Assembly: GCF_001194135.2 (NCBI RefSeq)
Contig: NC_068999.1
Span: forward strand, 31,661,070-31,702,008
DNA: 40,939 bases
DNA from: Octopus bimaculoides
Taxonomy: Eukaryota
Reading direction: 5' to 3'
Part shown: piece by piece, positions 3,321 to 39,554 of the stretch
Layout: each line of letters starts with the position of its first letter
How positions within the stretch are numbered: the first letter of the stretch is position 1
Made by a program: the position numbers and the translations under genes
Notes under the pieces: generated by a model
The model's database searches: none
What the model was told of the DNA's origin: nothing
What the model saw: the letters and a program-made list of their open reading frames with translations, nothing else

Positions 3321-3754
3321 AATAAAAAAAGTTAAGGCAATAAAAATTCAACAATAGTCATAGAATCTTCAACGTTAATTACGTACAAATGCTAAAAATA
3401 AAGAAAAGAACTGTTTTAACATTTCTCATATCTGTTTTCTAGAGATGCAGCGAAACTCTTAGTGGTAATGTGTAATGTATAAACCTTAAATTCAAATAAA
3501 TATATTTCACTCTCTTGCTAGATATTGAATCCCATTTTTGTTGATGCTTGTATAACGTTCGTAAAATTAAGAGTGTATATACATGGATCTGGATGCATCA
3601 ATATTTACATGTGCATGTGTATTTGTATGCGGGTGCGTTGTTGATTAAAAGCTGAATATTAGAACATCGAATGTGTGTGCGTGTATGTATAGGCAAACAC
3701 ATACGTATATATCCATATATATGTATATGTGTGTATGTGTACGTTTATATGTAT

Positions 3755-3812
<58 letters not shown>

Positions 3813-5600
3813 NNNNNNNNNNNNNNNNNNNNNNNNNNNNNNNNNNNNNNNNNNNNNNNNNNNNNNNNNNNNNNNNNNNNNNNNNNNNNNNNNNNNNNNN
3901 NNNNNNNNNNNNNNNNNNNNNNNNNNNNNNNNNNNNNNNNNNNNNNNNNNNNNNNNNNNNNNNNNNNNNNNNNNNNNNNNNNNNNNNNNNNNNNNNNNNN
4001 NNNNNNNNNNNNNNNNNNNNNNNNNNNNNNNNNNNNNNNNNNNNNNNNNNNNNNNNNNNNNNNNNNNNNNNNNNNNNNNNNNNNNNNNNNNNNNNNNNNN
4101 NNNNNNNNNNNNNNNNNNNNNNNNNNNNNNNNNNNNNNNNNNNNNNNNNNNNNNNNNNNNNNNNNNNNNNNNNNNNNNNNNNNNNNNNNNNNNNNNNNNN
4201 NNNNNNNNNNNNNNNNNNNNNNNNNNNNNNNNNNNNNNNNNNNNNNNNNNNNNNNNNNNNNNNNNNNNNNNNNNNNNNNNNNNNNNNNNNNNNNNNNNNN
4301 NNNNNNNNNNNNNNNNNNNNNNNNNNNNNNNNNNNNNNNNNNNNNNNNNNNNNNNNNNNNNNNNNNNNNNNNNNNNNNNNNNNNNNNNNNNNNNNNNNNN
4401 NNNNNNNNNNNNNNNNNNNNNNNNNNNNNNNNNNNNNNNNNNNNNNNNNNNNNNNNNNNNNNNNNNNNNNNNNNNNNNNNNNNNNNNNNNNNNNNNNNNN
4501 NNNNNNNNNNNNNNNNNNNNNNNNNNNNNNNNNNNNNNNNNNNNNNNNNNNNNNNNNNNNNNNNNNNNNNNNNNNNNNNNNNNNNNNNNNNNNNNNNNNN
4601 NNNNNNNNNNNNNNNNNNNNNNNNNNNNNNNNNNNNNNNNNNNNNNNNNNNNNNNNNNNNNNNNNNNNNNNNNNNNNNNNNNNNNNNNNNNNNNNNNNNN
4701 NNNNNNNNNNNNNNNNNNNNNNNNNNNNNNNNNNNNNNNNNNNNNNNNNNNNNNNNNNNNNNNNNNNNNNNNGACAAAAACATGATTTCATTCCACTTTA
4801 ATTTTCCTCCAGCCGTGAGTTAACAATAATAAAATAAATGGCTGCAGAATCACATCCATTTCCTTGTAAAAGTTATTCGGACGATTTTGAGAAGAGATAT
4901 TTTAAATGTTTTTCGTGCTGTGTATTTTTCATTTCATTTCAAAGTTTCAGCTCAGAGCTGCGGCCATGCTGATGCACCACCGTGTATGTATACAGAAGCA
5001 TAGGTACACGTATAGACGTAAAAGTTCACACGTTCATAGATATATTTCTTTTGCCTCTGTGAAGGATGAACTTGTTTTAGGTTGTTATTTGTATTGATAC
5101 AGTAGTTATATTTAGAATGGTGGGGACTGGGTAGATTTTGCTTCATTGTGTTATTTTCTATAGTATATTTTTGCACATACAAATACACACTCTTATGTAT
5201 ACATGCATATATATAATTTCTATACACATACACGCACACACACACATATGAGTGTGGTGTGTGTGTGTTGATTTGCTTTCTTTAGATTCGCAAATGAATG
5301 AAAATATAAAAAGATGTTGGCATTATCACATAAGTGTTATTGTGAACAGCATCCGGAGATTTTTAGAATCGCTGTGTATCTCTGGCACCCATTCGTCCAT
5401 CCACTAAATCATCCATCAGTCTATCTATCCACCCAGCCAAGCAGCCAGCCAGCCATGTATACATACGAAATACAGATGAAAACAAAGAGAGAGAGAGAAG
5501 GGGAGGGTCCAGATCTAGTGTTCGTGAAAATCTATAATTAAGGAAAAATACAGTGCAATAAAACCCCGTCCATTTGTGATGAATGAATCTAATTACCATA

Positions 5601-7783: not shown

Positions 7784-9129
7784 AACTGTACACCCCCACC
7801 TCCATTGCACACACTATTTTTATCTATCCAATCAATATCTATGCAGATTAGGATAAAATCAGGAATACAAAGAAACTGGTGTTAGTCTTTATTAACGACA
7901 GCAGTTCATAAAATGGCTTTCTAGGTTTAATTGATGCAAGGAGTGAAGAATTTAATATTTTGGGAGTGAGAAAGAGAGAGAGGGGAGAGAGGAGAAGAGA
8001 TAGAGAGTGGTGTCGTGGCTTGGATTGGTGGAAAATAATTCTACATGGAGTGTTCACTCTATAGTCTACATCTATACTCAATGTTTCGCTTTCCAATCAA
8101 CATCCACGCTGGCTCTATCTAATTGATTACCATCTACACGTTGTACCCTTCTAACAGGGTGTCCATAACAGAGCGAGGTGTATCAAAGTGAAGCATGCCA
8201 AATGTTAGCTAGACAAATTAACGCAACACAGACAGTTATCAAAGCACGGAACGCATCGATGAAGGGACGTTCAATGCTGTTAGATAATCCACAACTCCAA
8301 TAATGTCCGAAAGTATCCAATGATGAATGGAACCTTAAGCATGGCGTAAAACATAATAAAAACAGACGACTGGGTTACGTAGTTTTGCTACAAATGTTTC
8401 GTAAAGATTCCTTATTATGATATAAGCATAGTACTGACAATTATACAGTGTACACATCAACAACATTACATAATACGTAGCGCAACTCTCAACCCATCAG
8501 GCTAACCAAATAGACAAGCGGGCAGAGACATGTTGATTATTCAACAGATTATTAACAAGTCAAATTTCTAATCAGAATTACCGACATTTAAGAAATGTAA
8601 AGTGGGTGAAACTACAATCTTTCAGTCGAACGAGGGTGAATAGCAGAGTGATATTGTAAATTCAGAACAATTAAAGGCATTTTTATTCCAAGGATGTCAT
8701 TAAACTTCATAACCTCGCTCATCAAGACTAGTAGAGGTAGAAAATGCTTGTATACCGGTGGATAGCTGGTGCCGAGCAGAGCAATAAGTTCCATAAGCTA
8801 TTTTTGTCTAACGACAAATACCGATGACTGTAACTTCATTTGATCGATATTTTATATAAATCGATTTAATAACTTTATTCAATTTGCTTCTAGCCCTGGG
8901 CAATATCTTCATAAAATTCAATAAATTCTTTATAAACCCTTTATAATTCTTTATAATTCCTTACTCATAATAGTTTTAGATTATCATAGTAGTGTTTTAG
9001 CTATCTACTGAATTGTTTTCGTTATTTATCAGAAATAAGGATATTTACCCGTTCTTCTAAGCTATCTTGAGTTCGAGAATTTCTTTATTTTTTCTAGAAT
9101 ACCAACTTACTCAGTGCTTCTATGTTTTT

Positions 9130-10721: not shown

Positions 10722-11956
10722 NNNNNNNNNNNNNNNNNNNNNNNNNNNNNNNNNNNNNNNNNNNNNNNNNNNNNNNNNNNNNNNNNNNNNNNNNNNNNNN
10801 NNNNNNNNNNNNNNNNNNNNNNNNNNNNNNNNNNNNNNNNNNNNNNNNNNNNNNNNNNNNNNNNNNNNNNNNNNNNNNNNNNNNNNNNNNNNNNNNNNNN
10901 NNNNNNNNNNNNNNNNNNNNNNNNNNNNNNNNNNNNNNNNNNNNNNNNNNNNNNNNNNNNNNNNNNNNNNNNNNNNNNNNNNNNNNNNNNNNNNNNNNNN
11001 NNNNNNNNNNNNNNNNNNNNNNNNNNNNNNNNNNNNNNNNNNNNNNNNNNNNNNNNNNNNNNNNNNNNNNNNNNNNNNNNNNNNNNNNNNNNNNNNNNNN
11101 NNNNNNNNNNNNNNNNNNNNNNNNNNNNNNNNNNNNNNNNNNNNNNNNNNNNNNNNNNNNNNNNNNNNNNNNNNNNNNNNNNNNNNNNNNNNNNNNNNNN
11201 NNNNNNNNNNNNNNNNNNNNNNNNNNNNNNNNNNNNNNNNNNNNNNNNNNNNNATATATATATATATATATATGTATATACATATAAGCTTTCGCACAAA
11301 TACGCTAACTCAAACAAACCTACTCAAATGCACATACACGCGTACACACGTACATTCCTATATGTGTGTGTATGTCCGTCAGTGACATTCACTTTCATCC
11401 CACATTCGAACGCCACGCCATTTTATCGCCATAGTTCTACCACAAATTGCGTCATGTTATGCCAGGTTTCTCCAACCATGAACATATTGACAGCAATAAC
11501 TGCAATATTTCTATTGCAGAACATCATTAGAAAATAAAGATTTTCGGCGGGAAAAGTAATCGCATCCTAGTTGGACAATTGTGTATTGATTGATTGTTTG
11601 AATATAGGTAGGAATATCAAATGCAATTCTTTGAAGGTGACTGAACAATTCTCACATTACTTCTTCCTGACAGAGTTTCATGTGAGGCAAACACAAACGA
11701 CTGAGAGCGTTTGTGCGATAATTTCTGGTTAGTTCTTTCGTAAAGAAAATTAAAGAACACTAATTGATGATTAGATTGGAAATATCTATAATTAACCAAT
11801 GCTTTACTTCGTTTAGTATCTTTTGTTAAACCGTCGCAGAGTCTTTGATATTGGTTTATTCAGCGTTGATAACTATTAAAACCGTTATTTTTGCACAGAA
11901 CACTTGAAATTTGCTGACGTAATAGACTATTTAGAAATTCATCAAGAAGAATAAAG

Positions 11957-13214: not shown

Positions 13215-13660
13215 TGAACCTCTCAAATCAAAAGAATATTGATGGAAATTTAAAATCAAACCGCCACAAAGTTGAAACAGGACCGGCCAGATATAGTTGA
13301 GTGGGACATCAAGAAAAAATATCCTCTAATTCAGGATAAAAACATATAGGTACATTGCTGCATAATTTTTTTTCCTCAACAGGCCCTGCCCTGTTTAACA
13401 TTGTCCCGAAACAGATAAAAGAGGAAACAGATCCTATCAGTTTTAAACGGAGTCTAGACAGCTTTCTTCAAAGAATACCAGACAAACCACCCATACCTGG
13501 ATACAACTCACTCAACAAGAACTCACTACTTGAATGGACCATAGACAAAACTTGACTGTAAAAAGGATTTAGATAATCCTATCAGGTGGTGCTATTAAGT
13601 TAGACATGGGCTGGACCAACCTTTGGTCGAAACATATCTAAGTTTTATCTAAGTTTTATC
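13215..13660 (+). mobile_element. CR1/L2-group LINE, 5'-truncated 3' end (ORF2 C-terminus, 3' UTR, tandem tail)
   Basis: HNFFSSTGPALFNIVPKQIKEETDPISFKRSLDSFLQRIPDKPPIPGYNSLNKNSLLEW fits the C-terminal GPxLFN...FKxxLDxFL..IPD.P..PGY...NSL pattern. In-frame stops lie upstream, and the tail is atctaagttttatctaagttttatc. Confidence 0.75.
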
Positions 13661-17097: not shown

Positions 17098-17153
<56 letters not shown>

Positions 17154-17316
17154 NNNNNNNNNNNNNNNNNNNNNNNNNNNNNNNNNNNNNNNNNNNNNNN
17201 NNNNNNNNNNNNNNNNNNNNNNNNNNNNNNNNNNNNNNNNNNNNNNNGTGTGTGTGTGTGTGCGTGTGTGCGTGCGTGCGTGCATGCGTGTGTGCTGTGT
17301 GTGTATGTGTGTGTGT

Positions 17317-17348
<32 letters not shown>

Positions 17349-17565
17349 ATACATATATACACGAATTTGGGAGAACCCAAACTGGTGCACATCAGAAAGG
17401 ATGGTATGAAAAAAACCCACTGAAATGGATCTGTAAAACTGTACTGTGTAAATAATGATATCCCCCACTCTGTTGACAAATATACGAGTGTTCGTTTTTT
17501 CTCTGCTTTATGAATTCTTAGACAGTTAAATATACGATATATATTTATATATATATATATATATA

Positions 17566-18902
17566 GACAACTGAATAATAACAGACGATGGATAACTGTC
17601 AGTTCATTACAGCTGTTTCTTACGCATTTTTTAATAGAAGTATGAGAACATTACTCCATTACAAAAAACCGTAATCATCAGACGAAACGTAATTTTACAA
17701 ACAAAAGAATATCCCAAGAATACAGCAGGGACGTGGCTGAAGTCTGCCGAGACTAACTATGAAATGGGAGAATGGCCAACAAAGTTGGCCGTTGTAGGTA
17801 TTAAGGGATGGGATTAGAATATAGTTTGTGATAGGGTGTAATATGATATTTAAGCTCAATGACCTGGGTGAGATTGGAATTTGCTAGACTGGTTCTTTGA
17901 TAGGCTAGAGGTGGGGTGTAGTTGATATTTTATTATAGCAGGCTTAAAGAAGTGGGTAGCTGGGAGATGACCGAAGATAAATTAAGAATAAAGAAATAAA
18001 AAGTAAAAGTGATATATCTTAGCTATTGCTAATGCATAATACTGGGTACACCACAAATAGAATGGTTAGTTCCTTCAATATAGCATACCATGCAAGTATA
18101 GTAAGCGTGGTTAGGAAGTGATGGTAAAGAAAAGCGAGACTAGAACTCAAACAATTAAGCAAATCAATCGAGTTTTGGGTCAACGATAGAGGGAGTAAAT
18201 TAGATTGGCCGTAGGTTAGGAGCTGTTATAGAGGTTGTTTAATGTCCTTAAAATATTTAAAGTGCAGGTAGCCTAGGAAAGACGAAGGTCTAGTTTATTA
18301 TTTATTAGATTTTCATTATTTGATCTCTTTAAAATTTCAAACAGCTCCATGCAGCAAAGCCTGCACTCGTATCTGCTGTTTGAGTACGGTTTAGCGACCC
18401 TAATGATGTCCCAACGCAAATCAAATTTAACATTGTCATCCTTGAGTTCCCAAATCTTCGTGGCTAGAGAAGTCCTGCCTGCACTACGTCTTAATTTAAA
18501 GGAAGAATAGTGGTTACGTAAGTGCTCCTTGAGATTTAAGGAGCAGCCGATATAAATGTAAGTATTGGTCACCGTCACAACATTACATTTGTAAACCACA
18601 TTTAGGGCTAAATATCGACCAGAAAGTGGACATGACATTTTGTCTAAACAGTTGCTCCCAATATTACCTAAGACATGAAATTTATTATTACGAGTACGCG
18701 ATCTTACGTTATTATGGCGTTCAAGCTCGCGAGAGCTACCGATGTTCGCATGGTTGTTACCGGGGTTTATATTACTTGGATTATAACTATTACAATTAGT
18801 TGCCGAACCCTGGGTCGGAGAATGTGGGTACTGAGCATTATCGTAAGAGATTTGACTTTCAGATAGTGACACTTTAGGGTGGACAGTATAACGGAAAATT
18901 TT
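17566..18902 (-). mobile_element. Penelope-like element 3' portion: GIY-YIG endonuclease remnant plus ~700-nt 3' UTR with hammerhead, ending at (TA)n
   Basis: ORF 18273-18872 (open from 18902) reads KIFRYTVHPKVS...SNCLDKMSCPLSGRYLALNVVYKCNV...YIYIGCSLNLKEHLRNHYSSF...TSLATKIWELK...WDII...CRLC..E. This matches the PLE endonuclease pattern CPLxGxCL..VVY..YIG...RxxNH..LS..IWxLK..W.I..CxLC. Some conserved Cys/Arg residues are mutated, and no RT is present. Confidence 0.85.
17603..17686 (-). ncRNA. Type I hammerhead ribozyme with long helix II
   Basis: UUCGU-CUGAUGA-UUACG...(55-nt helix II)...CGUAA-GAAA-C(AGCU)G-UA/AUGAA. All core boxes are present, helix I has 5 bp, and the predicted cut lies between 17608 and 17607. 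Confidence 0.8.
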
Positions 18903-19621
18903 TCAGTACAAGTGTTAGTGTTCTGTGCGTTGTGCATATCGACAACATGAATGGAAGTAAGGTTTCCGTTGATGCTTGGACCGTCATCTCAAGTGTTTTC
19001 CCCTTCCACATCTCGCATCTGGTTCCCGTAGCCTGGAGCACCGCTATGTCGCCTTCACTTCCTTTGTGGACTGCAGCTGCTACCCACGTCTATTTCAGGT
19101 GGAATACATTCGACTTTAATCCTTGCTGCCCGTCTGCCCATATAAGTGGGCAACAACACCACTTCATCCTTTATAATCTTCGCTGCCTGCTTCTTTGCAT
19201 TTTGTTCCTTTGTGAACCTCACCTCCAATGTACCAAATCTTGTTCCTCTCTTTATAAAGGCTATGTTGTGCCACAGGGACCTTAAAACTTTTTCTATTTG
19301 GTTTGTGTTTACATTCTCGATTCTGCTAGCCTTCGTTGAAAATGTTTTGTGCATAATTGTCTTTCTCCTGATACCTTCCAACATTTCCTTTGGAGGGAAC
19401 AATTCCACGTTGTACCTCTCTCTAGAGATCAAATTTGAAAAATTACCAATTTTCTTATTGTCAATTTCTTCTTCCTCCTGTCATGTCACTTCCGTGAAGT
19501 CTTTCTTGTCATTCTCCTTGATTTTCTTATCCATTTCTCTTATCGCTTTTAGTAGTTCTTCCGAAGACTATAATTCAGACCCACTAAGGTCTGAATAAAA
19601 TACACTCTTCTTTTTTCCCAT
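18874..19621 (-). pseudogene. L1/Tx1-like ORF1 (RRM-type nucleic-acid chaperone), decayed
   Basis: ATG at 19621 (MGKKKSVFYSDL...), an acidic/coiled-coil-like stretch, then GTRFGTLEVRF...VLLPTYMGRRAARIKVECIPPEID and, after a frameshift near 19082, WVAAAV...WKGKTLEMTVQ...RTLTLVL. Two in-frame stops and no zinc knuckle; clade assignment is from recall of the pattern. Confidence 0.6.
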
Positions 19622-19776
19622 AGCTAACTCTCGTCAAAAGAGGAGAAAAAGCACAAATTGCTGCAAAGCAGCACAAAAACAATTAACAAAGTGTTTATAA
19701 AAACACTGACACAAAAGCAAAACACTACGGAAAACACTGTCAAAATGACTTGGGTACACCTTGCAAAAGACCGGAA

Positions 19777-19808
19777 GCGTGCTAACGTTTCTGCCAGCTC
19801 GCTGCCTT
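19777..19808 (-). mobile_element. SINE family A head only
   Basis: aaggcagcgagctggcagaaacgttagcacgc, then an abrupt switch into the ORF1 5' UTR (ttccggtcttttgc). Confidence 0.75.
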
Positions 19809-21941
19809 TAAAACAGTTTGAATATTGAGCTACGTATTTTTTTTTTGGAGGGGGGGGGATATATGTCCATGTTTGTGTGTTGTGTAATGGGTACGTGTTG
19901 TGTAATGGGTGTGTGCTGTGTATGTATGTGTGCGTTAAGACAAAGAAAGTGAGATGGGCGCTTCAGTAACTACCTCGTCTATAATAAGCTAATAATCTTT
20001 TAACTTCACCTGTATATATTATTTTAGGAATCTTGATAGAGATGATTTTATAGCTTCAGGTAAAAATGTGAACCTTAAAGCATTACTTGTTACTATTCAA
20101 GAAAGTAACTTCACGAAATAGCGTCATAGAATCATCTGAAACTGTCAGGTATCCAAGCAATTCATATCGATATTCAAATTGCATCGTTTAACATGTAAGG
20201 AAGCAATTCATTTTTATCGTATTTGCTGCAAACACAAATTCAGTATCCTTGCAGATATATGTAAATGTGTGTGTGTTTGTATGTGTGTGTAATGTGTGTG
20301 TGTATGTGCGCGCGTGTGCCTGCATGTGTGTGTGCGCGCGCATGCGTGTAAATTACCAAATGCATTCGAAGAGATGTCTAAGTCACAAATACATACTATA
20401 GCATACATAAACACTTCAGCCTTTTAGCTGCTAATCATGAAATCCCTTGTTTTCATTTATCGCTTTCGATATGTTATTTCAATATTTCCGCTCGTGTTAT
20501 TTTCACGGTTTTTTTTTTTTTTTTACCTGGTTTCGACTGAGGTCATCCATGATTCAACAGACTTCTGATTGAATCTTTTGCAGATATATAGATATCTTCC
20601 TTCATAATCGACTACATTATCAGGTATCAGAAGTAATGTGAATTTTGAGGAATATTAAGTTTCTATTTCTTTACATTGAGTTACCACATGGAGGTGTGGG
20701 AGGTTTCTTTATGGCTTGTCTAAAGTGGAATGTTGTTGAAATGTTTTTACCACCAGAAAACATCAAATTTGTTGCCGTAATAAAAAGCACTGTGTGAGCT
20801 TCTTAATGAGTTGGAGAATCAACGAATCTATGGGTTTCATGGCAAAAAAGTGATGTTTTTGAAGCCTCTCAAGAGTTGGCATTTTCGAGATGCTTTTTTG
20901 AAAGATGATGTGCATAAAATTATAAGCACTTGATACTTATGTGCATTGGCTGAATCGTGCTGCTCGAGTAACATTTAACGCATTTGGCGAACTTTATCTC
21001 ATGTACGGCATAAATACGTAGGAATATGTTTATGAGGCAAATGAGGAGGTTGAACAGCGAGTAGAGAGTTTTTTCATCGAGTGGTCGTTTCTTCGACAAC
21101 CATTTCTGGGCGGAAGACCCTGAGAGAGTCAACTCTTTCCTACTAATAAGATATGAACGAAGCTGTGACTATCCAAATAATAAATCGGCCCTTATTTCAT
21201 TAGTTGTGCTCCCAATAGGGTTAAATATGGCAAAAACCTTTATTAAAAACTGAAATAGGCTTCTACAACGGGGATAGAATATTTTATGGATTAATAAAAT
21301 TATTCACAAGCATTCATTGATCTTTTTAACAACACCTTTAACAAATCCTACAATAAAACGCTTTCTTCATATATATGAAGTGTGTCTGTGTGTATGACCT
21401 GTGTAAATTTACGTCCGAATACTATACACACACACATATGCATGTAGCCTCGGGCCGACCGCGAAATTTTTCCCACGAGAGTCCTGGACCTAAGTTATGA
21501 ACTCATTTGCATACAACCAATCAGAGCTTAACTATCAAACTAATTTAGGGGCACATATATATTTNNNNNNNNNNNNNNNNNNNNNNNNNNNNNNNNNNNN
21601 NNNNNNNNNNNNNNNNNNNNNNNNNNNNNNNNNNNNNNNNNNNNNNNNNNNNNNNNNNNNNNNNNNNNNNNNNNNNNNNNNNNNNNNNNNNNNNNNNNNN
21701 NNNNNNNNNNNNNNNNNNNNNNNNNNNNNNNNNNNNNNNNNNNNNNNNNNNNNNNNNNNNNNNNNNNNNNNNNTGTATGTATGTATGTATGTATGTATGT
21801 ATAGATGAGTTCAGAAAAAAATTAGATTCAGATGAATATGGTACTTAAGTTGAGGCACCAGAATTTAGTACAGTATTATCCATACAATTTCAAAAAAAGG
21901 TGATTAAAATTAAAATAAGCAACAAGGATATCCAGAGGTAA

Positions 21942-22346: not shown

Positions 22347-23367
22347 TCATTGAATGCTCGAAATGATGAGTAGACAGACAGCCGACAACTGATGAAGGGT
22401 CGTTCTTTGTATTACTTGTCCTGTTTTCAAATTTTTTCTCTCGTTTACGTATTTCATATTGTCTATAGTTGGTAACGTCCTGTACCCATATATACATACA
22501 TATATATGTATATATATATATATATNNNNNNNNNNNNNNNNNNNNNNNNNNNNNNNNNNNNNNNNNNNNNNNNNNNNNNNNNNNNNNNNNNNNNNNNNNN
22601 NNNNNNNNNNNNNNNNNNNNNNNNNNNNNNNNNNNNNNNNNNNNNNNNNNNNNNNNNNNNNNNNNNNNNNNNNNNNNNNNNNNNNNNNNNNNNNNNNNNN
22701 NNNNNNNNNNNNNNNNNNNNNNNNNNNNNNNNNNNNNNNNNNNNNNNNNNNNNNNNNNNNNNNNNNNNNNNNNNNNNNNNNNNNNNNNNNNNNNNNNNNN
22801 NNNNNNNNNNNNNNNNNNNNNNNNNNNNNNNNNNNNNNNNNNNNNNNNNNNNNNNNNNNNNNNNNNNNNNNNNNNNNNNNNNNNNNNNNNNNNNNNNNNN
22901 NNNNNNNNNNNNNNNNNNNNNNNNNNNNNNNNNNNNNNNNNNNNNNNNNNNNNNNNNNNNNNNNNNNNNNNNNNNNNNNNNNNNNNNNNNNNNNNNNNNN
23001 NNNNNNNNNNNNNNNNNNNNNNNNNNNNNNNNNNNNNNNNNNNNNNNNNNNNNNNNNNNNNNNNNNNNNNNNNNNNNNNNNNNNNNNNNNNNNNNNNNNN
23101 NNNNNNNNNNNNNNNNNNNNNNNNNNNNNNNNNNNNNNNNNNNNNNNNNNNNNNNNNNNNNNNNNNNNNNNNNNNNNNNNNNNNNNNNNNNNNNNNNNNN
23201 NNNNNNNNNNNNNNNNNNNNNNNNNNNNNNNNNNNNNNNNNNNNNNNNNNNNNNNNNNNNNNNNNNNNNNNNNNNNNNNNNNNNNNNNNNNNNNNNNNNN
23301 NNNNNNNNNNNNNNNNNNNNNNNNNNNNNNNNNNATATATATATATATATATATATTATTTATATTA

Positions 23368-38905: not shown

Positions 38906-39554
38906 NNNNNNNNNNNNNNNNNNNNNNNNNNNNNNNNNNNNNNNNNNNNNNNNNNNNNNNNNNNNNNNNNNNNNNNNNNNNNNNNNNNNNNNNNNNNNNN
39001 NNNNNNNNNNNNNNNNNNNNNNNNNNNNNNNNNNNNNNNNNNNNNNNNNNNNNNNNNNNNNNNNNNNNNNNNNNNNNNNNNNNNNNNNNNNNNNNNNNNN
39101 NNNNNNNNNNNNNNNNNNNNNNNNNNNNNNNNNNNNNNNNNNNNNNNNNNNNNNNNNNNNNNNNNNNNNNNNNNNNNNNNNNNNNNNNNNNNNNNNNNNN
39201 NNNNNNNNNNNNNNNNNNNNNNNNNNNNNNNNNNNNNNNNNNNNNNNNNNNNNNNNNNNNNNNNNNNNNNNNNNNNNNNNNNNNNNNNNNNNNNNNNNNN
39301 NNNNNNNNNNNNNNNNNNNNNNNNNNNNNNNNNNNNNNNNNNNNNNNNNNNNNNNNNNNNNNNNNNNNNNNNNNNNNNNNNNNNNNNNNNNNNNNNNNNN
39401 NNNNNNNNATATATATATATATATACATACATACACGTATGCATATATGCGCGCGCGTGTGTGTGTGTGCGTTTATCTTTAATCTTTTACTCGTTTCAGT
39501 CATTAAACTGCTGCCATTTCTGCGTGAATGAATTCATCAACACACTGGTGACTC

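What the first reader, a model, noticed from the sequence alone, without database searches (positions are those of the whole stretch)
17566..19776. RT-less retroelement module: LINE ORF1-like gene joined to a Penelope GIY-YIG endonuclease and a hammerhead 3' UTR
Seen: on one strand there is a 155-nt leader, an ATG-initiated ORF1-like frame (19621 to 18874), a GIY-YIG frame that opens at 18902 and overlaps the ORF1 end by ~29 nt, a ~700-nt UTR with a complete hammerhead, then (TA)n. No RT lies anywhere in it, and the missing rest of the LINE (knuckle, APE, RT) is not found beyond the (TA)n as simple nesting would predict. Established: PLE endonucleases normally follow an RT, and L1/Tx1 ORF1 is followed by APE-RT, so the two parts come from different retroelement orders. 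Inference: either (a) a propagated non-autonomous chimeric family supplying chaperone, nickase and a self-cleaving end while borrowing RT, or (b) a one-off 5'-truncated PLE insertion into a Tx1 ORF1 followed by deletion. KIF...KVS at the junction resembles the PLE post-RT linker, which favours (b) unless the junction recurs.
Basis: partly seen in the sequence, partly recalled or inferred. Interest (0 to 1): 0.8.

Follow-up and report, generated by a model that had tools for sequence, protein, structure and literature searches.

The report
Dead truncated Penelope-like element beside debris
This is an ordinary dead, 5'-truncated copy of a 'Hydra-clade' Penelope-like retrotransposon (broken endonuclease, 3' UTR with a hammerhead motif, landed in a TA repeat) lying next to an unrelated decayed gene fragment; it is not a working RT-less mobile module.

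Summary
On the minus strand there is a leader, an ATG frame, a GIY-YIG frame, a ~700-nt UTR with a hammerhead core, then (TA)n, and no RT.

Three details are wrong:
1. The 'ORF1' is not one frame. It has two in-frame stops and needs a frameshift. No tool links it to any LINE ORF1.
2. The endonuclease is of the Hydra clade of Penelope-like elements (PLEs), not the Penelope type. It is decayed: two Zn-ligand Cys are lost, the catalytic Arg is His, and a stop precedes the CxH motif.
3. The junction is misplaced. Homology to a related PLE copy runs through 18874-18902 and begins sharply at 18959. The quoted 'KIF...KVS' lies in a 49-nt indel inside the PLE's RT-EN linker.

Related octopod loci carry RT, or an RT tail, then the linker and EN. 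One O. sinensis copy is near full length. None carries the ORF1-like piece, and neither do the 150 best EN homologues.

Rfam misses the hammerhead. A simple descriptor finds exactly one in the window (0.04 expected). The O. sinensis element has the same architecture at the same place, with three compensatory pairs.

Verdict: a one-off juxtaposition of a 5'-truncated PLE, inserted at (TA)n, with older decayed sequence. Copy number of the junction in the source genome could not be tested. Low interest.

The parts
19777..19808 (-). About the first 32 nt (5' head) of a tRNA-like SINE, cut off after ...GTTAGCACGC
   Evidence: 26-mer found twice in the window, 0 expected. A full SINE copy lies at about 32127-31930 (-).
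19622..19776 (-). 155-nt leader of fragment X (unknown family)
   Evidence: Read directly. No homologue found in the window or in the fetched loci.
18960..19621 (-). In-frame stops at 19570-19568 and 19483-19481, frame-1 stop at 19057-19055, and a frameshift needed after about 19060.
   Evidence: The 141-codon open stretch is reached by 1 of 1000 shuffles. No family assignment.
18959..18960 (-). True breakpoint between fragment X and the PLE-derived sequence
   Evidence: Alignment with L010: no similarity 5' of 18959, and about 85% identity from 18959 onward.
18681..18959 (-). Remnant of the low-complexity (N/S/T-rich) RT-EN linker of an octopod Hydra-clade PLE.
   Evidence: L008 ORF 4255-6684 shows RT tail, then a long N-rich linker, then EN. 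L006 and L010 show an RT tail upstream.
18273..18680 (-). Decayed CxCX5C linker motif plus GIY-YIG endonuclease of the Hydra-clade PLE type. SNC replaces CNC, GRY replaces GxC, KEH replaces KxR, and a stop falls before the CxH.
   Evidence: phmmer: 2511 homologues with E<=1e-3. Alignment. 48% identity, E=4e-43, to the EN of the O. sinensis element. Pfam GIY-YIG only 14 bits, below cut-off.
17566..18272 (-). PLE 3' UTR
   Evidence: Homologous to the UTRs of L010 and L009 down to about 18015.
17603..17686 (-). Type-I, min-HHR-like hammerhead motif. Helix I is 5 bp. Helix II is 5 bp plus a roughly 45-nt insertion. Helix III is the palindrome ACAGCUGU. The predicted cut is after 17608.
   Evidence: Not found by Rfam.
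17537..17565 (.). (TA)14.5 microsatellite at the 3' end, the preferred target of Hydra-clade PLEs
   Evidence: TRF. Target preference from PMC8557442.

Best explanation
The locus is dead composite debris, not a module.

Shown: its 3' 1.4 kb (18959-17566, minus strand) is a 5'-truncated copy of a Hydra-clade Penelope-like element. It consists of a remnant of the low-complexity RT-EN linker, a mutationally inactivated GIY-YIG endonuclease, and the 3' UTR with the clade's hammerhead motif.

Inferred: this copy was laid down by target-primed reverse transcription that began at a (TA)n microsatellite, the clade's usual target, and stopped before reaching the RT.

Its 5' end abuts an unrelated, older, decayed 817-nt fragment X. 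X has a leader and an ATG-initiated ex-coding frame of unknown family, possibly a LINE ORF1. X in turn abuts the first ~32 nt of a SINE.

Inferred: the X/PLE junction arose once, by loss of the DNA between X and the (TA)n, either at the time of PLE integration (a target-site deletion) or later.

Nothing here can supply chaperone or nickase activity today.
For: EN identity
- 2511 homologues were found.
- The long ones (P0087, P0140; the L008 ORF of 809 aa) carry the RWK, DKT and YRDD motifs, the CxCX5C linker, CxxC...CxH around the E and N residues, and no CCHH. This matches the Hydra clade as described in PMC8557442.
- The window EN is 48% identical (E=4e-43) to the EN of the near-full-length O. 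sinensis element. Against a canonical CCHH-type PLE EN in the same locus it reaches only E=0.014.

Truncation and junction
- tblastn of the 809-aa PLE ORF finds only the EN in the window.
- L010, L006 and L008 have RT or an RT tail, then the linker, upstream of the EN.

No recurrence of X
- X is absent from 6 independent related loci and from the 150 best EN homologues.
- Of the 37 homologues with at least 60 aa upstream of the EN, 23 show the PLE RT-tail motif.

Decay
- X has stops and a frameshift.
- The EN has lost two conserved Cys and the catalytic Arg, and is cut before the CxH.

Hammerhead and (TA)n
-, together with the paper's statement that Hydra elements insert in (TA)n and always carry HHRs.
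Against: - The source genome could not be searched, so the copy number of the X/PLE junction is unknown.
- No (TA)n or target-site duplication is seen at the 5' side. The deletion step is therefore inferred, not shown.
- The RT identity of the relatives' upstream region rests on motif matches to a published description. Pfam, a PDB profile search and Foldseek gave no significant RT hit.
- The only close comparator across the breakpoint is one Logan contig of unknown species (L010).
Confidence: 0.75

Rival explanations
1. Single-event template-switch chimera. Reverse transcription primed at the (TA)n copied the 3' 1.4 kb of a PLE RNA. It then jumped to an X RNA and copied it to its 5' end, and jumped again to a SINE RNA and copied its first ~32 nt. 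The result is a tripartite retrocopy.
For: - All three pieces lie on the same strand, with sharp junctions and no filler.
- Each upstream piece looks like the 5'-terminal portion of its RNA. The SINE piece starts at the SINE 5' end, as shown by the full copy at 32127. X starts with a leader and an ATG.
- Bipartite and tripartite chimeras of this layout are known for LINE RTs (PMC2104539).
Against: - No target-site duplication and no (TA)n upstream of the SINE head.
- The true 5' end of X is unknown, because no other copy was found.
- I found no report of template switching by a PLE RT (one search found none in PMC11167929).
- Three same-strand pieces is only about a 1-in-4 coincidence.
Confidence: 0.12
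2. One reading: a propagated non-autonomous family that carries an ORF1-like chaperone gene, a PLE nickase and a hammerhead end, and borrows an RT in trans.
For: - The pieces are co-linear on one strand.
- X has a real ex-coding frame.
- Copy number in the source genome could not be tested.
Against: - Both frames are broken.
- The EN frame has no ATG of its own upstream of the domain.
- The supposed ORF overlap lies inside PLE linker sequence.
- No related locus or EN homologue carries X.
- No protein like X was found among 5.8 billion.
Confidence: 0.04
3. Assembly artefact: the short-read draft joined a PLE copy and an X copy that are not adjacent in the genome.
For: - The window has 8 N gaps and is microsatellite-rich.
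- The element sits in a 4.3-kb contig between gaps at 17154-17247 and 21565-21773.
Against: - The whole composite lies within one gap-free contig.
- No repeat shared between X and the PLE is visible at the breakpoint that could mislead an assembler.
- Nothing positive points to a mis-join.
Confidence: 0.08

Closest known systems
Hydra clade of Penelope-like elements (Craig, Yushenova, Rodriguez & Arkhipova 2021, PMC8557442)
   Same: - EN homologous to proteins that carry the clade's RWK, DKT, CxCX5C, CxxC and CxH features and lack CCHH.
- A hammerhead near the 3' end.
- Insertion at (TA)n.
- 5' truncation.
- The clade is already reported from Mollusca.
   Different: - This copy lacks the RT entirely, and its EN is mutated.
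- The octopod family has a long N/S-rich linker between the RT tail and the EN, and a long UTR. The L008 element is about 4.1 kb, against the '<3 kb' given for the clade.
- Its hammerhead has a ~45-60-nt insertion in helix II and U-A or A-U instead of G10.1-C11.1.
Canonical Penelope/Poseidon/Neptune PLE endonuclease (CCHH type)
   Same: The GIY-YIG core, and its position downstream of an RT in full-length relatives.
   Different: - No CxxC between the GIY and YIG motifs.
- Only E=0.014 against a canonical PLE EN present in L008 9847-10362(-).
Minimal/type-I hammerheads of metazoan PLEs (Cervera & de la Pena 2014, PMC4209133)
   Same: - The CUGAUGA...GAAA...UH core.
- A short palindromic helix III, which implies action as a dimer.
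- Location in the PLE terminal region.
   Different: - Not matched by any Rfam hammerhead model.
- The 10.1-11.1 pair is not G-C.
- A very large helix II insertion.
- A single copy here, so no dimer partner.
Chimeric (bi- or tripartite) retrocopies made by RT template switching (e.g. PMC2104539)
   Same: Same-strand fusion of 5' portions of different RNAs to the 3' part of a retroelement.
   Different: - No flanking direct repeats were found.
- The enzyme would be a PLE RT, for which I know of no such report.
LINE ORF1 proteins (L1 or Tx1 type)
   Same: A leader plus an ATG-initiated frame with a charged N-terminus.
   Different: No Pfam, PDB, homologue or fold support. No zinc knuckle, APE or RT follows.

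Membership tests
Hydra-clade PLE | GIY-YIG EN homologous to clade members and lacking the CCHH motif | tested here: met
   (48% identity, E=4e-43, to the L008 EN). There is no CxxC between GIY and YIG.
Hydra-clade PLE | CxCX5C linker upstream of the EN; CxxC and CxH around the conserved E and N | tested here: inconclusive
   The motifs are present in relatives (106 of 150 have CxCx5CP). In the window they are degenerate: SNC-x5-C is present, the Cys after the G is now Y, the CxxC (CRLC) is kept, and the CxH is lost to a stop. This pattern is consistent with decay of a member.
Hydra-clade PLE | RT with RWK and DKT motifs upstream of the EN in one ORF | tested here: not met
   Absent from the window, as expected for a 5'-truncated copy. 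Present in L008, P0087 and P0140.
Hydra-clade PLE | Hammerhead motif near the 3' end and insertion in (TA)n | tested here: met
   The same layout is seen in L008 (HHR at 7798-7873, (AT)n from 8024).
Naiad (N-terminal EN PLE) | EN followed by a CxC domain and an RT in the same ORF; no canonical HHR | tested here: not met
   The EN is followed by a stop, a UTR and an HHR. Relatives place the EN at the C-terminus.
Hammerhead ribozyme | Conserved core C3-A9, G12-A14, A15.1-U16.1 and H17, flanked by helices I-III | tested here: met
   Descriptor hit. 97% of cells are paired, with 3 compensatory pairs against L008. The MFE fold recovers helices I and II.
Hammerhead ribozyme | Match to a curated Rfam hammerhead covariance model | tested here: not met
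   no hit even at E<=10.
Hammerhead ribozyme | Self-cleavage | not testable with these tools
   Needs in vitro transcription of monomer and dimer constructs.
LINE ORF1p (L1/Tx1 type) | Recognisable coiled-coil/RRM/CTD or RRM+CCHC domains, followed by APE-RT | tested here: not met
   Pfam none, PDB none, no homologues, AF2 pLDDT 55 and Foldseek nothing, no APE/RT downstream. Sensitivity for divergent TE proteins is low, so this lowers the label without excluding it.
Non-LTR retrozyme | Tandem copies of an HHR-bearing unit without coding capacity | tested here: not met
   Only one HHR in the window, and no tandem repeat of the UTR.
Template-switch chimeric retrocopy | Flanking target-site duplication around the whole chimera | tested here: not met
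   The local alignment of the flanks scores no better than shuffles.

The most novel reading that the evidence does not exclude
The composite could be a tripartite retrocopy made in one integration event by a PLE reverse transcriptase. The RT would have switched templates twice, from PLE RNA to X RNA to SINE RNA. To my knowledge this would be the first indication of LINE-like chimera formation by a Penelope-like element.
Probability: 0.1. Interest if true: 0.4.

Novelty: already known. Interest (0 to 1): 0.13.

Why it matters
It matters little in itself. 5'-truncated PLE copies at (TA)n next to other repeat debris are routine in invertebrate genomes.

Three by-products are useful:
- Octopod Hydra-clade PLEs carry a hammerhead variant with a large helix II insertion and a non-G-C 10.1-11.1 pair. 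The Rfam models miss it, so annotation pipelines will under-call it.
- These elements have a long low-complexity linker between RT and EN. Truncated copies therefore look like stand-alone EN genes.
- The case shows how overlapping open frames at a supposed junction can be an artefact of reading decayed linker sequence in another frame.

Tried and rejected
RNA searches
- Rfam at gathering score and at E<=10, on the window, the region, 111-nt slices and the related loci: no hammerhead.

Identifying fragment X
- Pfam on both frames gave only sub-threshold noise and a 14-bit GIY-YIG hit.
- The word-indexed 5.8-billion-protein search found nothing for X and one hit for the EN.
- A PDB sequence search with X found nothing.
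- AF2 on the 125-aa X ORF gave pLDDT 55, and the Foldseek matches were meaningless.
- A back-translated scan of JGI metagenomes for X found nothing.
- tblastx of X against the window and all loci found nothing.

Tracing the source
- Exact-product look-ups of the two window ORFs found nothing on record, so the source assembly could not be traced.

Other tests
- A target-site duplication search around the composite gave nothing above shuffles. A by-eye match (ATATTCAAACTGT... against ATATTTAACTGT...) was dropped as AT-rich chance.
- A search for the 'missing' LINE body beyond the (TA)n found only low-complexity frames.
- Attempts to show an RT fold for the relatives' upstream region failed. Pfam found nothing and the PDB profile search found nothing. 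The AF2 model was poor outside the EN, and the weak Foldseek hits to HIV and group II intron RTs and to I-TevI were not significant.

Readings considered and rejected
- Naiad: the EN would be N-terminal to an RT.
- X as a PLE ORF1: the full-length L008 element has none.
Full report
**What is at the coordinates**

Reading the minus strand from 19808 to 17537 gives, in order:
- the first ~32 nt of a SINE (19808-19777);
- a 155-nt leader (19776-19622);
- an ATG at 19621 opening a frame;
- a frame open from 18902 to a stop at 18275-18273, which holds a GIY-YIG-like domain;
- about 707 nt of non-coding sequence (18272-17566);
- (TA)14.5 at 17565-17537.

The window is a gapped draft with 8 N runs. 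One gap, at 17154-17247, lies about 290 nt beyond the (TA)n.

**The 'ORF1' frame**

It is not one frame. 19621->18874 is 748 nt, which is not a multiple of 3. There is a TAG at 19570-19568, a TGA at 19483-19481 and a stop at 19057-19055. A frameshift is needed to reach the 55-codon frame that ends at 18874.

The piece is nevertheless genuine ex-coding sequence. Its longest stop-free stretch is 141 codons, which 1 of 1000 dinucleotide shuffles reaches.

Nothing assigns it to a family:
- no relevant Pfam hit at E<=10;
- no hit among 5.8 billion proteins;
- nothing in PDB sequences;
- an AF2 model with pLDDT 55 whose Foldseek matches are meaningless;
- nothing in JGI metagenomes;
- nothing elsewhere in the window or in any fetched locus.

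I therefore call it fragment X. 'LINE ORF1-like' remains a resemblance by eye.

**The endonuclease**

A full phmmer scan of 1.84 billion representatives found 2511 homologues with E<=1e-3. Most are short predicted proteins with the domain at their C-terminus.

The long ones (P0087 and P0140, 722 aa each) and an 809-aa ORF in an octopod chromosome locus carry these features upstream of and around the EN:
- an RWK motif and a DKT motif;
- an FDIxxFY...YRDD polymerase-like core;
- a WFNPP(F/Y)...SYS(C/T) tail;
- a CxCX5C linker;
- CxxC and CxH motifs flanking the conserved E and N;
- no CCHH.

The octopod locus is L008, from GCA_006345805.1, which to my knowledge is Octopus sinensis.

This feature list matches, point by point, the 'Hydra' clade of Penelope-like elements described by Craig et al. 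2021. That paper also reports universal hammerheads, insertion into (TA)n and presence in Mollusca for the clade (PMC8557442).

The window's EN is 48% identical (E=4e-43) to the EN of the L008 element. Against a canonical CCHH-type PLE EN that happens to lie in the same locus it scores only E=0.014. So the EN is PLE-derived, but of the Hydra clade, not the Penelope clade.

It is also dead:
- the first Cys of CxCX5C is Ser;
- the Cys after the conserved Gly is Tyr;
- the catalytic Arg (KxR) is His;
- the frame stops before the CxH.

One caveat applies. The RT nature of the relatives' upstream region rests on these motif matches. Pfam, a PDB profile search and Foldseek gave no significant RT hit.

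**Where the junction really is**

The closest nucleotide relative I could fetch is L010, a Logan contig of unknown species. It aligns at 74.7% identity over 18853-18015 and at 84% over 18959-18904.

The pairwise alignment shows no similarity 5' of 18959 and clear homology from 18959 onward. That homology is interrupted only by a 49-nt indel at 18854-18902.

Upstream of the homologous point, L010 continues into an S/T/N-rich coding-like stretch and a '...SYSTLSN...' RT-tail motif. L006 carries RT tail, linker and EN contiguously. L008 shows the RT, then the tail, then a long N-rich linker, then the EN, in one ORF.

So 18959-18681 is a remnant of the PLE's own low-complexity RT-EN linker. The supposed end of ORF1 (18959-18874) is that linker read in another frame. 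The X/PLE breakpoint is at 18959/18960.

**The hammerhead**

Rfam finds none, at gathering score or at E<=10, in the window, in 111-nt slices or in the related loci.

I wrote a simple type-I descriptor requiring:
- helix I of at least 4 bp;
- CUGANGA;
- helix II of at least 3 bp, with a loop of up to ~100 nt;
- GAAA;
- helix III of at least 2 bp, with no loop required;
- UH.

It gives exactly one hit in the whole window on both strands, at 17686-17603 on the minus strand. Composition-matched shuffles give 0.04 hits on average.

The same descriptor hits L008 twice. One hit is at 7798-7873, about 150 nt before the (AT)n that ends the near-full-length element. The other is in an inverted 3'-end fragment at 3712-3624.

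All three hits share one architecture:
- a 5-bp helix I;
- a helix II with a 45-60-nt insertion;
- GAAAC;
- a palindromic or near-palindromic helix III (ACAGCUGU, ACAAUUGU, ACAAAUGU);
- a UA cleavage site.

On the alignment, 97% of cells pair, against 32-43% when partners are slid. One pair in each helix has changed on both sides between the window and L008. That comparison has only three sequences, two of them near-identical.

Outside this island the window and L008 UTRs are not alignable. The MFE fold of the window motif recovers helices I and II.

A short palindromic helix III is the hallmark of metazoan PLE hammerheads, which are thought to act as dimers (PMC4209133).

Two features are atypical: the 10.1-11.1 pair is U-A or A-U rather than G-C, and helix II carries a large insertion. 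I accept the motif as a PLE hammerhead with about 0.8 confidence. Catalysis is untested, and a lone copy has no dimer partner.

**Is there a recurrent RT-less family?**

I could not search the source genome. The evidence I could gather gives no support:
- X is absent from six independent related loci: L001, L006, L008, L009, L010 and L011.
- X is absent from all 150 best EN homologues.
- Of the 37 homologues with at least 60 residues upstream of the EN, 23 show the RT-tail motif and 18 show NPP(F/Y).
- Both frames in the window are broken.
- The EN frame has no ATG of its own ahead of the domain.
- tblastn with the 809-aa PLE ORF finds only the EN in the window.
- No APE/RT-like frames lie beyond the (TA)n.

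**How the composite most likely arose**

The 3' end in (TA)n and the missing 5' part are the normal outcome of target-primed reverse transcription by a Hydra-clade PLE. That much follows from the anatomy plus the published biology of the clade.

The 5' junction to X has no (TA)n and no detectable target-site duplication. I therefore infer loss of the DNA between X and the (TA)n, at integration or later.

The SINE head upstream of X fits an earlier insertion of X into a SINE. The 3' remainder of that SINE would have been lost in the same deletion.

A rival explanation fits the layout: same strand, sharp joints, and each upstream piece being a 5'-terminal portion of its RNA. This is a double template switch during one reverse-transcription event, as documented for LINE RTs (PMC2104539). 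Without a duplication, or knowledge of X's true 5' end, I give it about 0.1. Mis-assembly cannot be excluded in a short-read draft (about 0.08).

**Verdict**

This is an ordinary, dead, 5'-truncated Hydra-clade PLE beside unrelated decayed sequence. The headline (an RT-less module), the clade, the ORF1 label and the junction coordinates are not. Interest is low.

Noticed in passing
window 31930-32127 (-): A full-length copy of the tRNA-like SINE whose first ~32 nt sit upstream of fragment X. It is preceded by (ATT)n/(GTT)n microsatellites.
   Followed up: partly
window 33039-33401 (+), also 33437-33709 (+), 34623-36049 (-), 25582-27012 (-): Decayed LINE-like ORF fragments. One has a sub-threshold Pfam zf-RVT hit (E=2.9e-5). 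None lies downstream of X on its strand, so none is the 'missing' LINE body.
   Followed up: partly
window 13340-13552 (+): A 71-codon open frame ending '...FKRSLDSFLQRIPDKPPIPGY...'. By eye it looks like the C-terminal end of a LINE ORF2. It is on the opposite strand and has no Pfam hit.
   Followed up: partly
window 3813-4772, 10722-11253, 17154-17247, 21565-21773, 22526-23334, 23846-24266, 31395-31487, 38906-39408: Eight assembly gaps, most flanked by microsatellites. (TG)n/(GT)n flank the gap nearest the element, at 17099-17348.
   Followed up: no
L008 3898-8024 (+) with 3590-3860 (-): A near-full-length Hydra-clade PLE in an octopod chromosome. It has an ATG at about 3898, a frameshifted N-terminus with RWK, an 809-aa open stretch, a 1.3-kb UTR with an HHR, and ends in (AT)n. 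An inverted copy of its own 3' end, with a second HHR, lies immediately upstream, next to another (TA)n. This is the inverted-duplicate insertion structure typical of PLEs.
   Followed up: partly
L008 9844-12093 (-) and 1209-1934 (-): Two further PLE fragments of the canonical kind in the same 13-kb locus. They show an RT motif 'FDVTNLYTNIP', 'RYLDDCF', and ENs with CxxC between GIY and YIG, e.g. 'NVIYCITCPTCKENYVGETG'.
   Followed up: partly
L001 about 2544 (+): A possible decayed counterpart of the hammerhead (CTTATGA...GAAAC AAATTT), about 1.8 kb downstream of a related EN. It is too degenerate to call.
   Followed up: no
window 18854-18902 (-): A 49-nt insertion/deletion relative to L010, inside the PLE linker. 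Which lineage gained or lost it is unknown.
   Followed up: no
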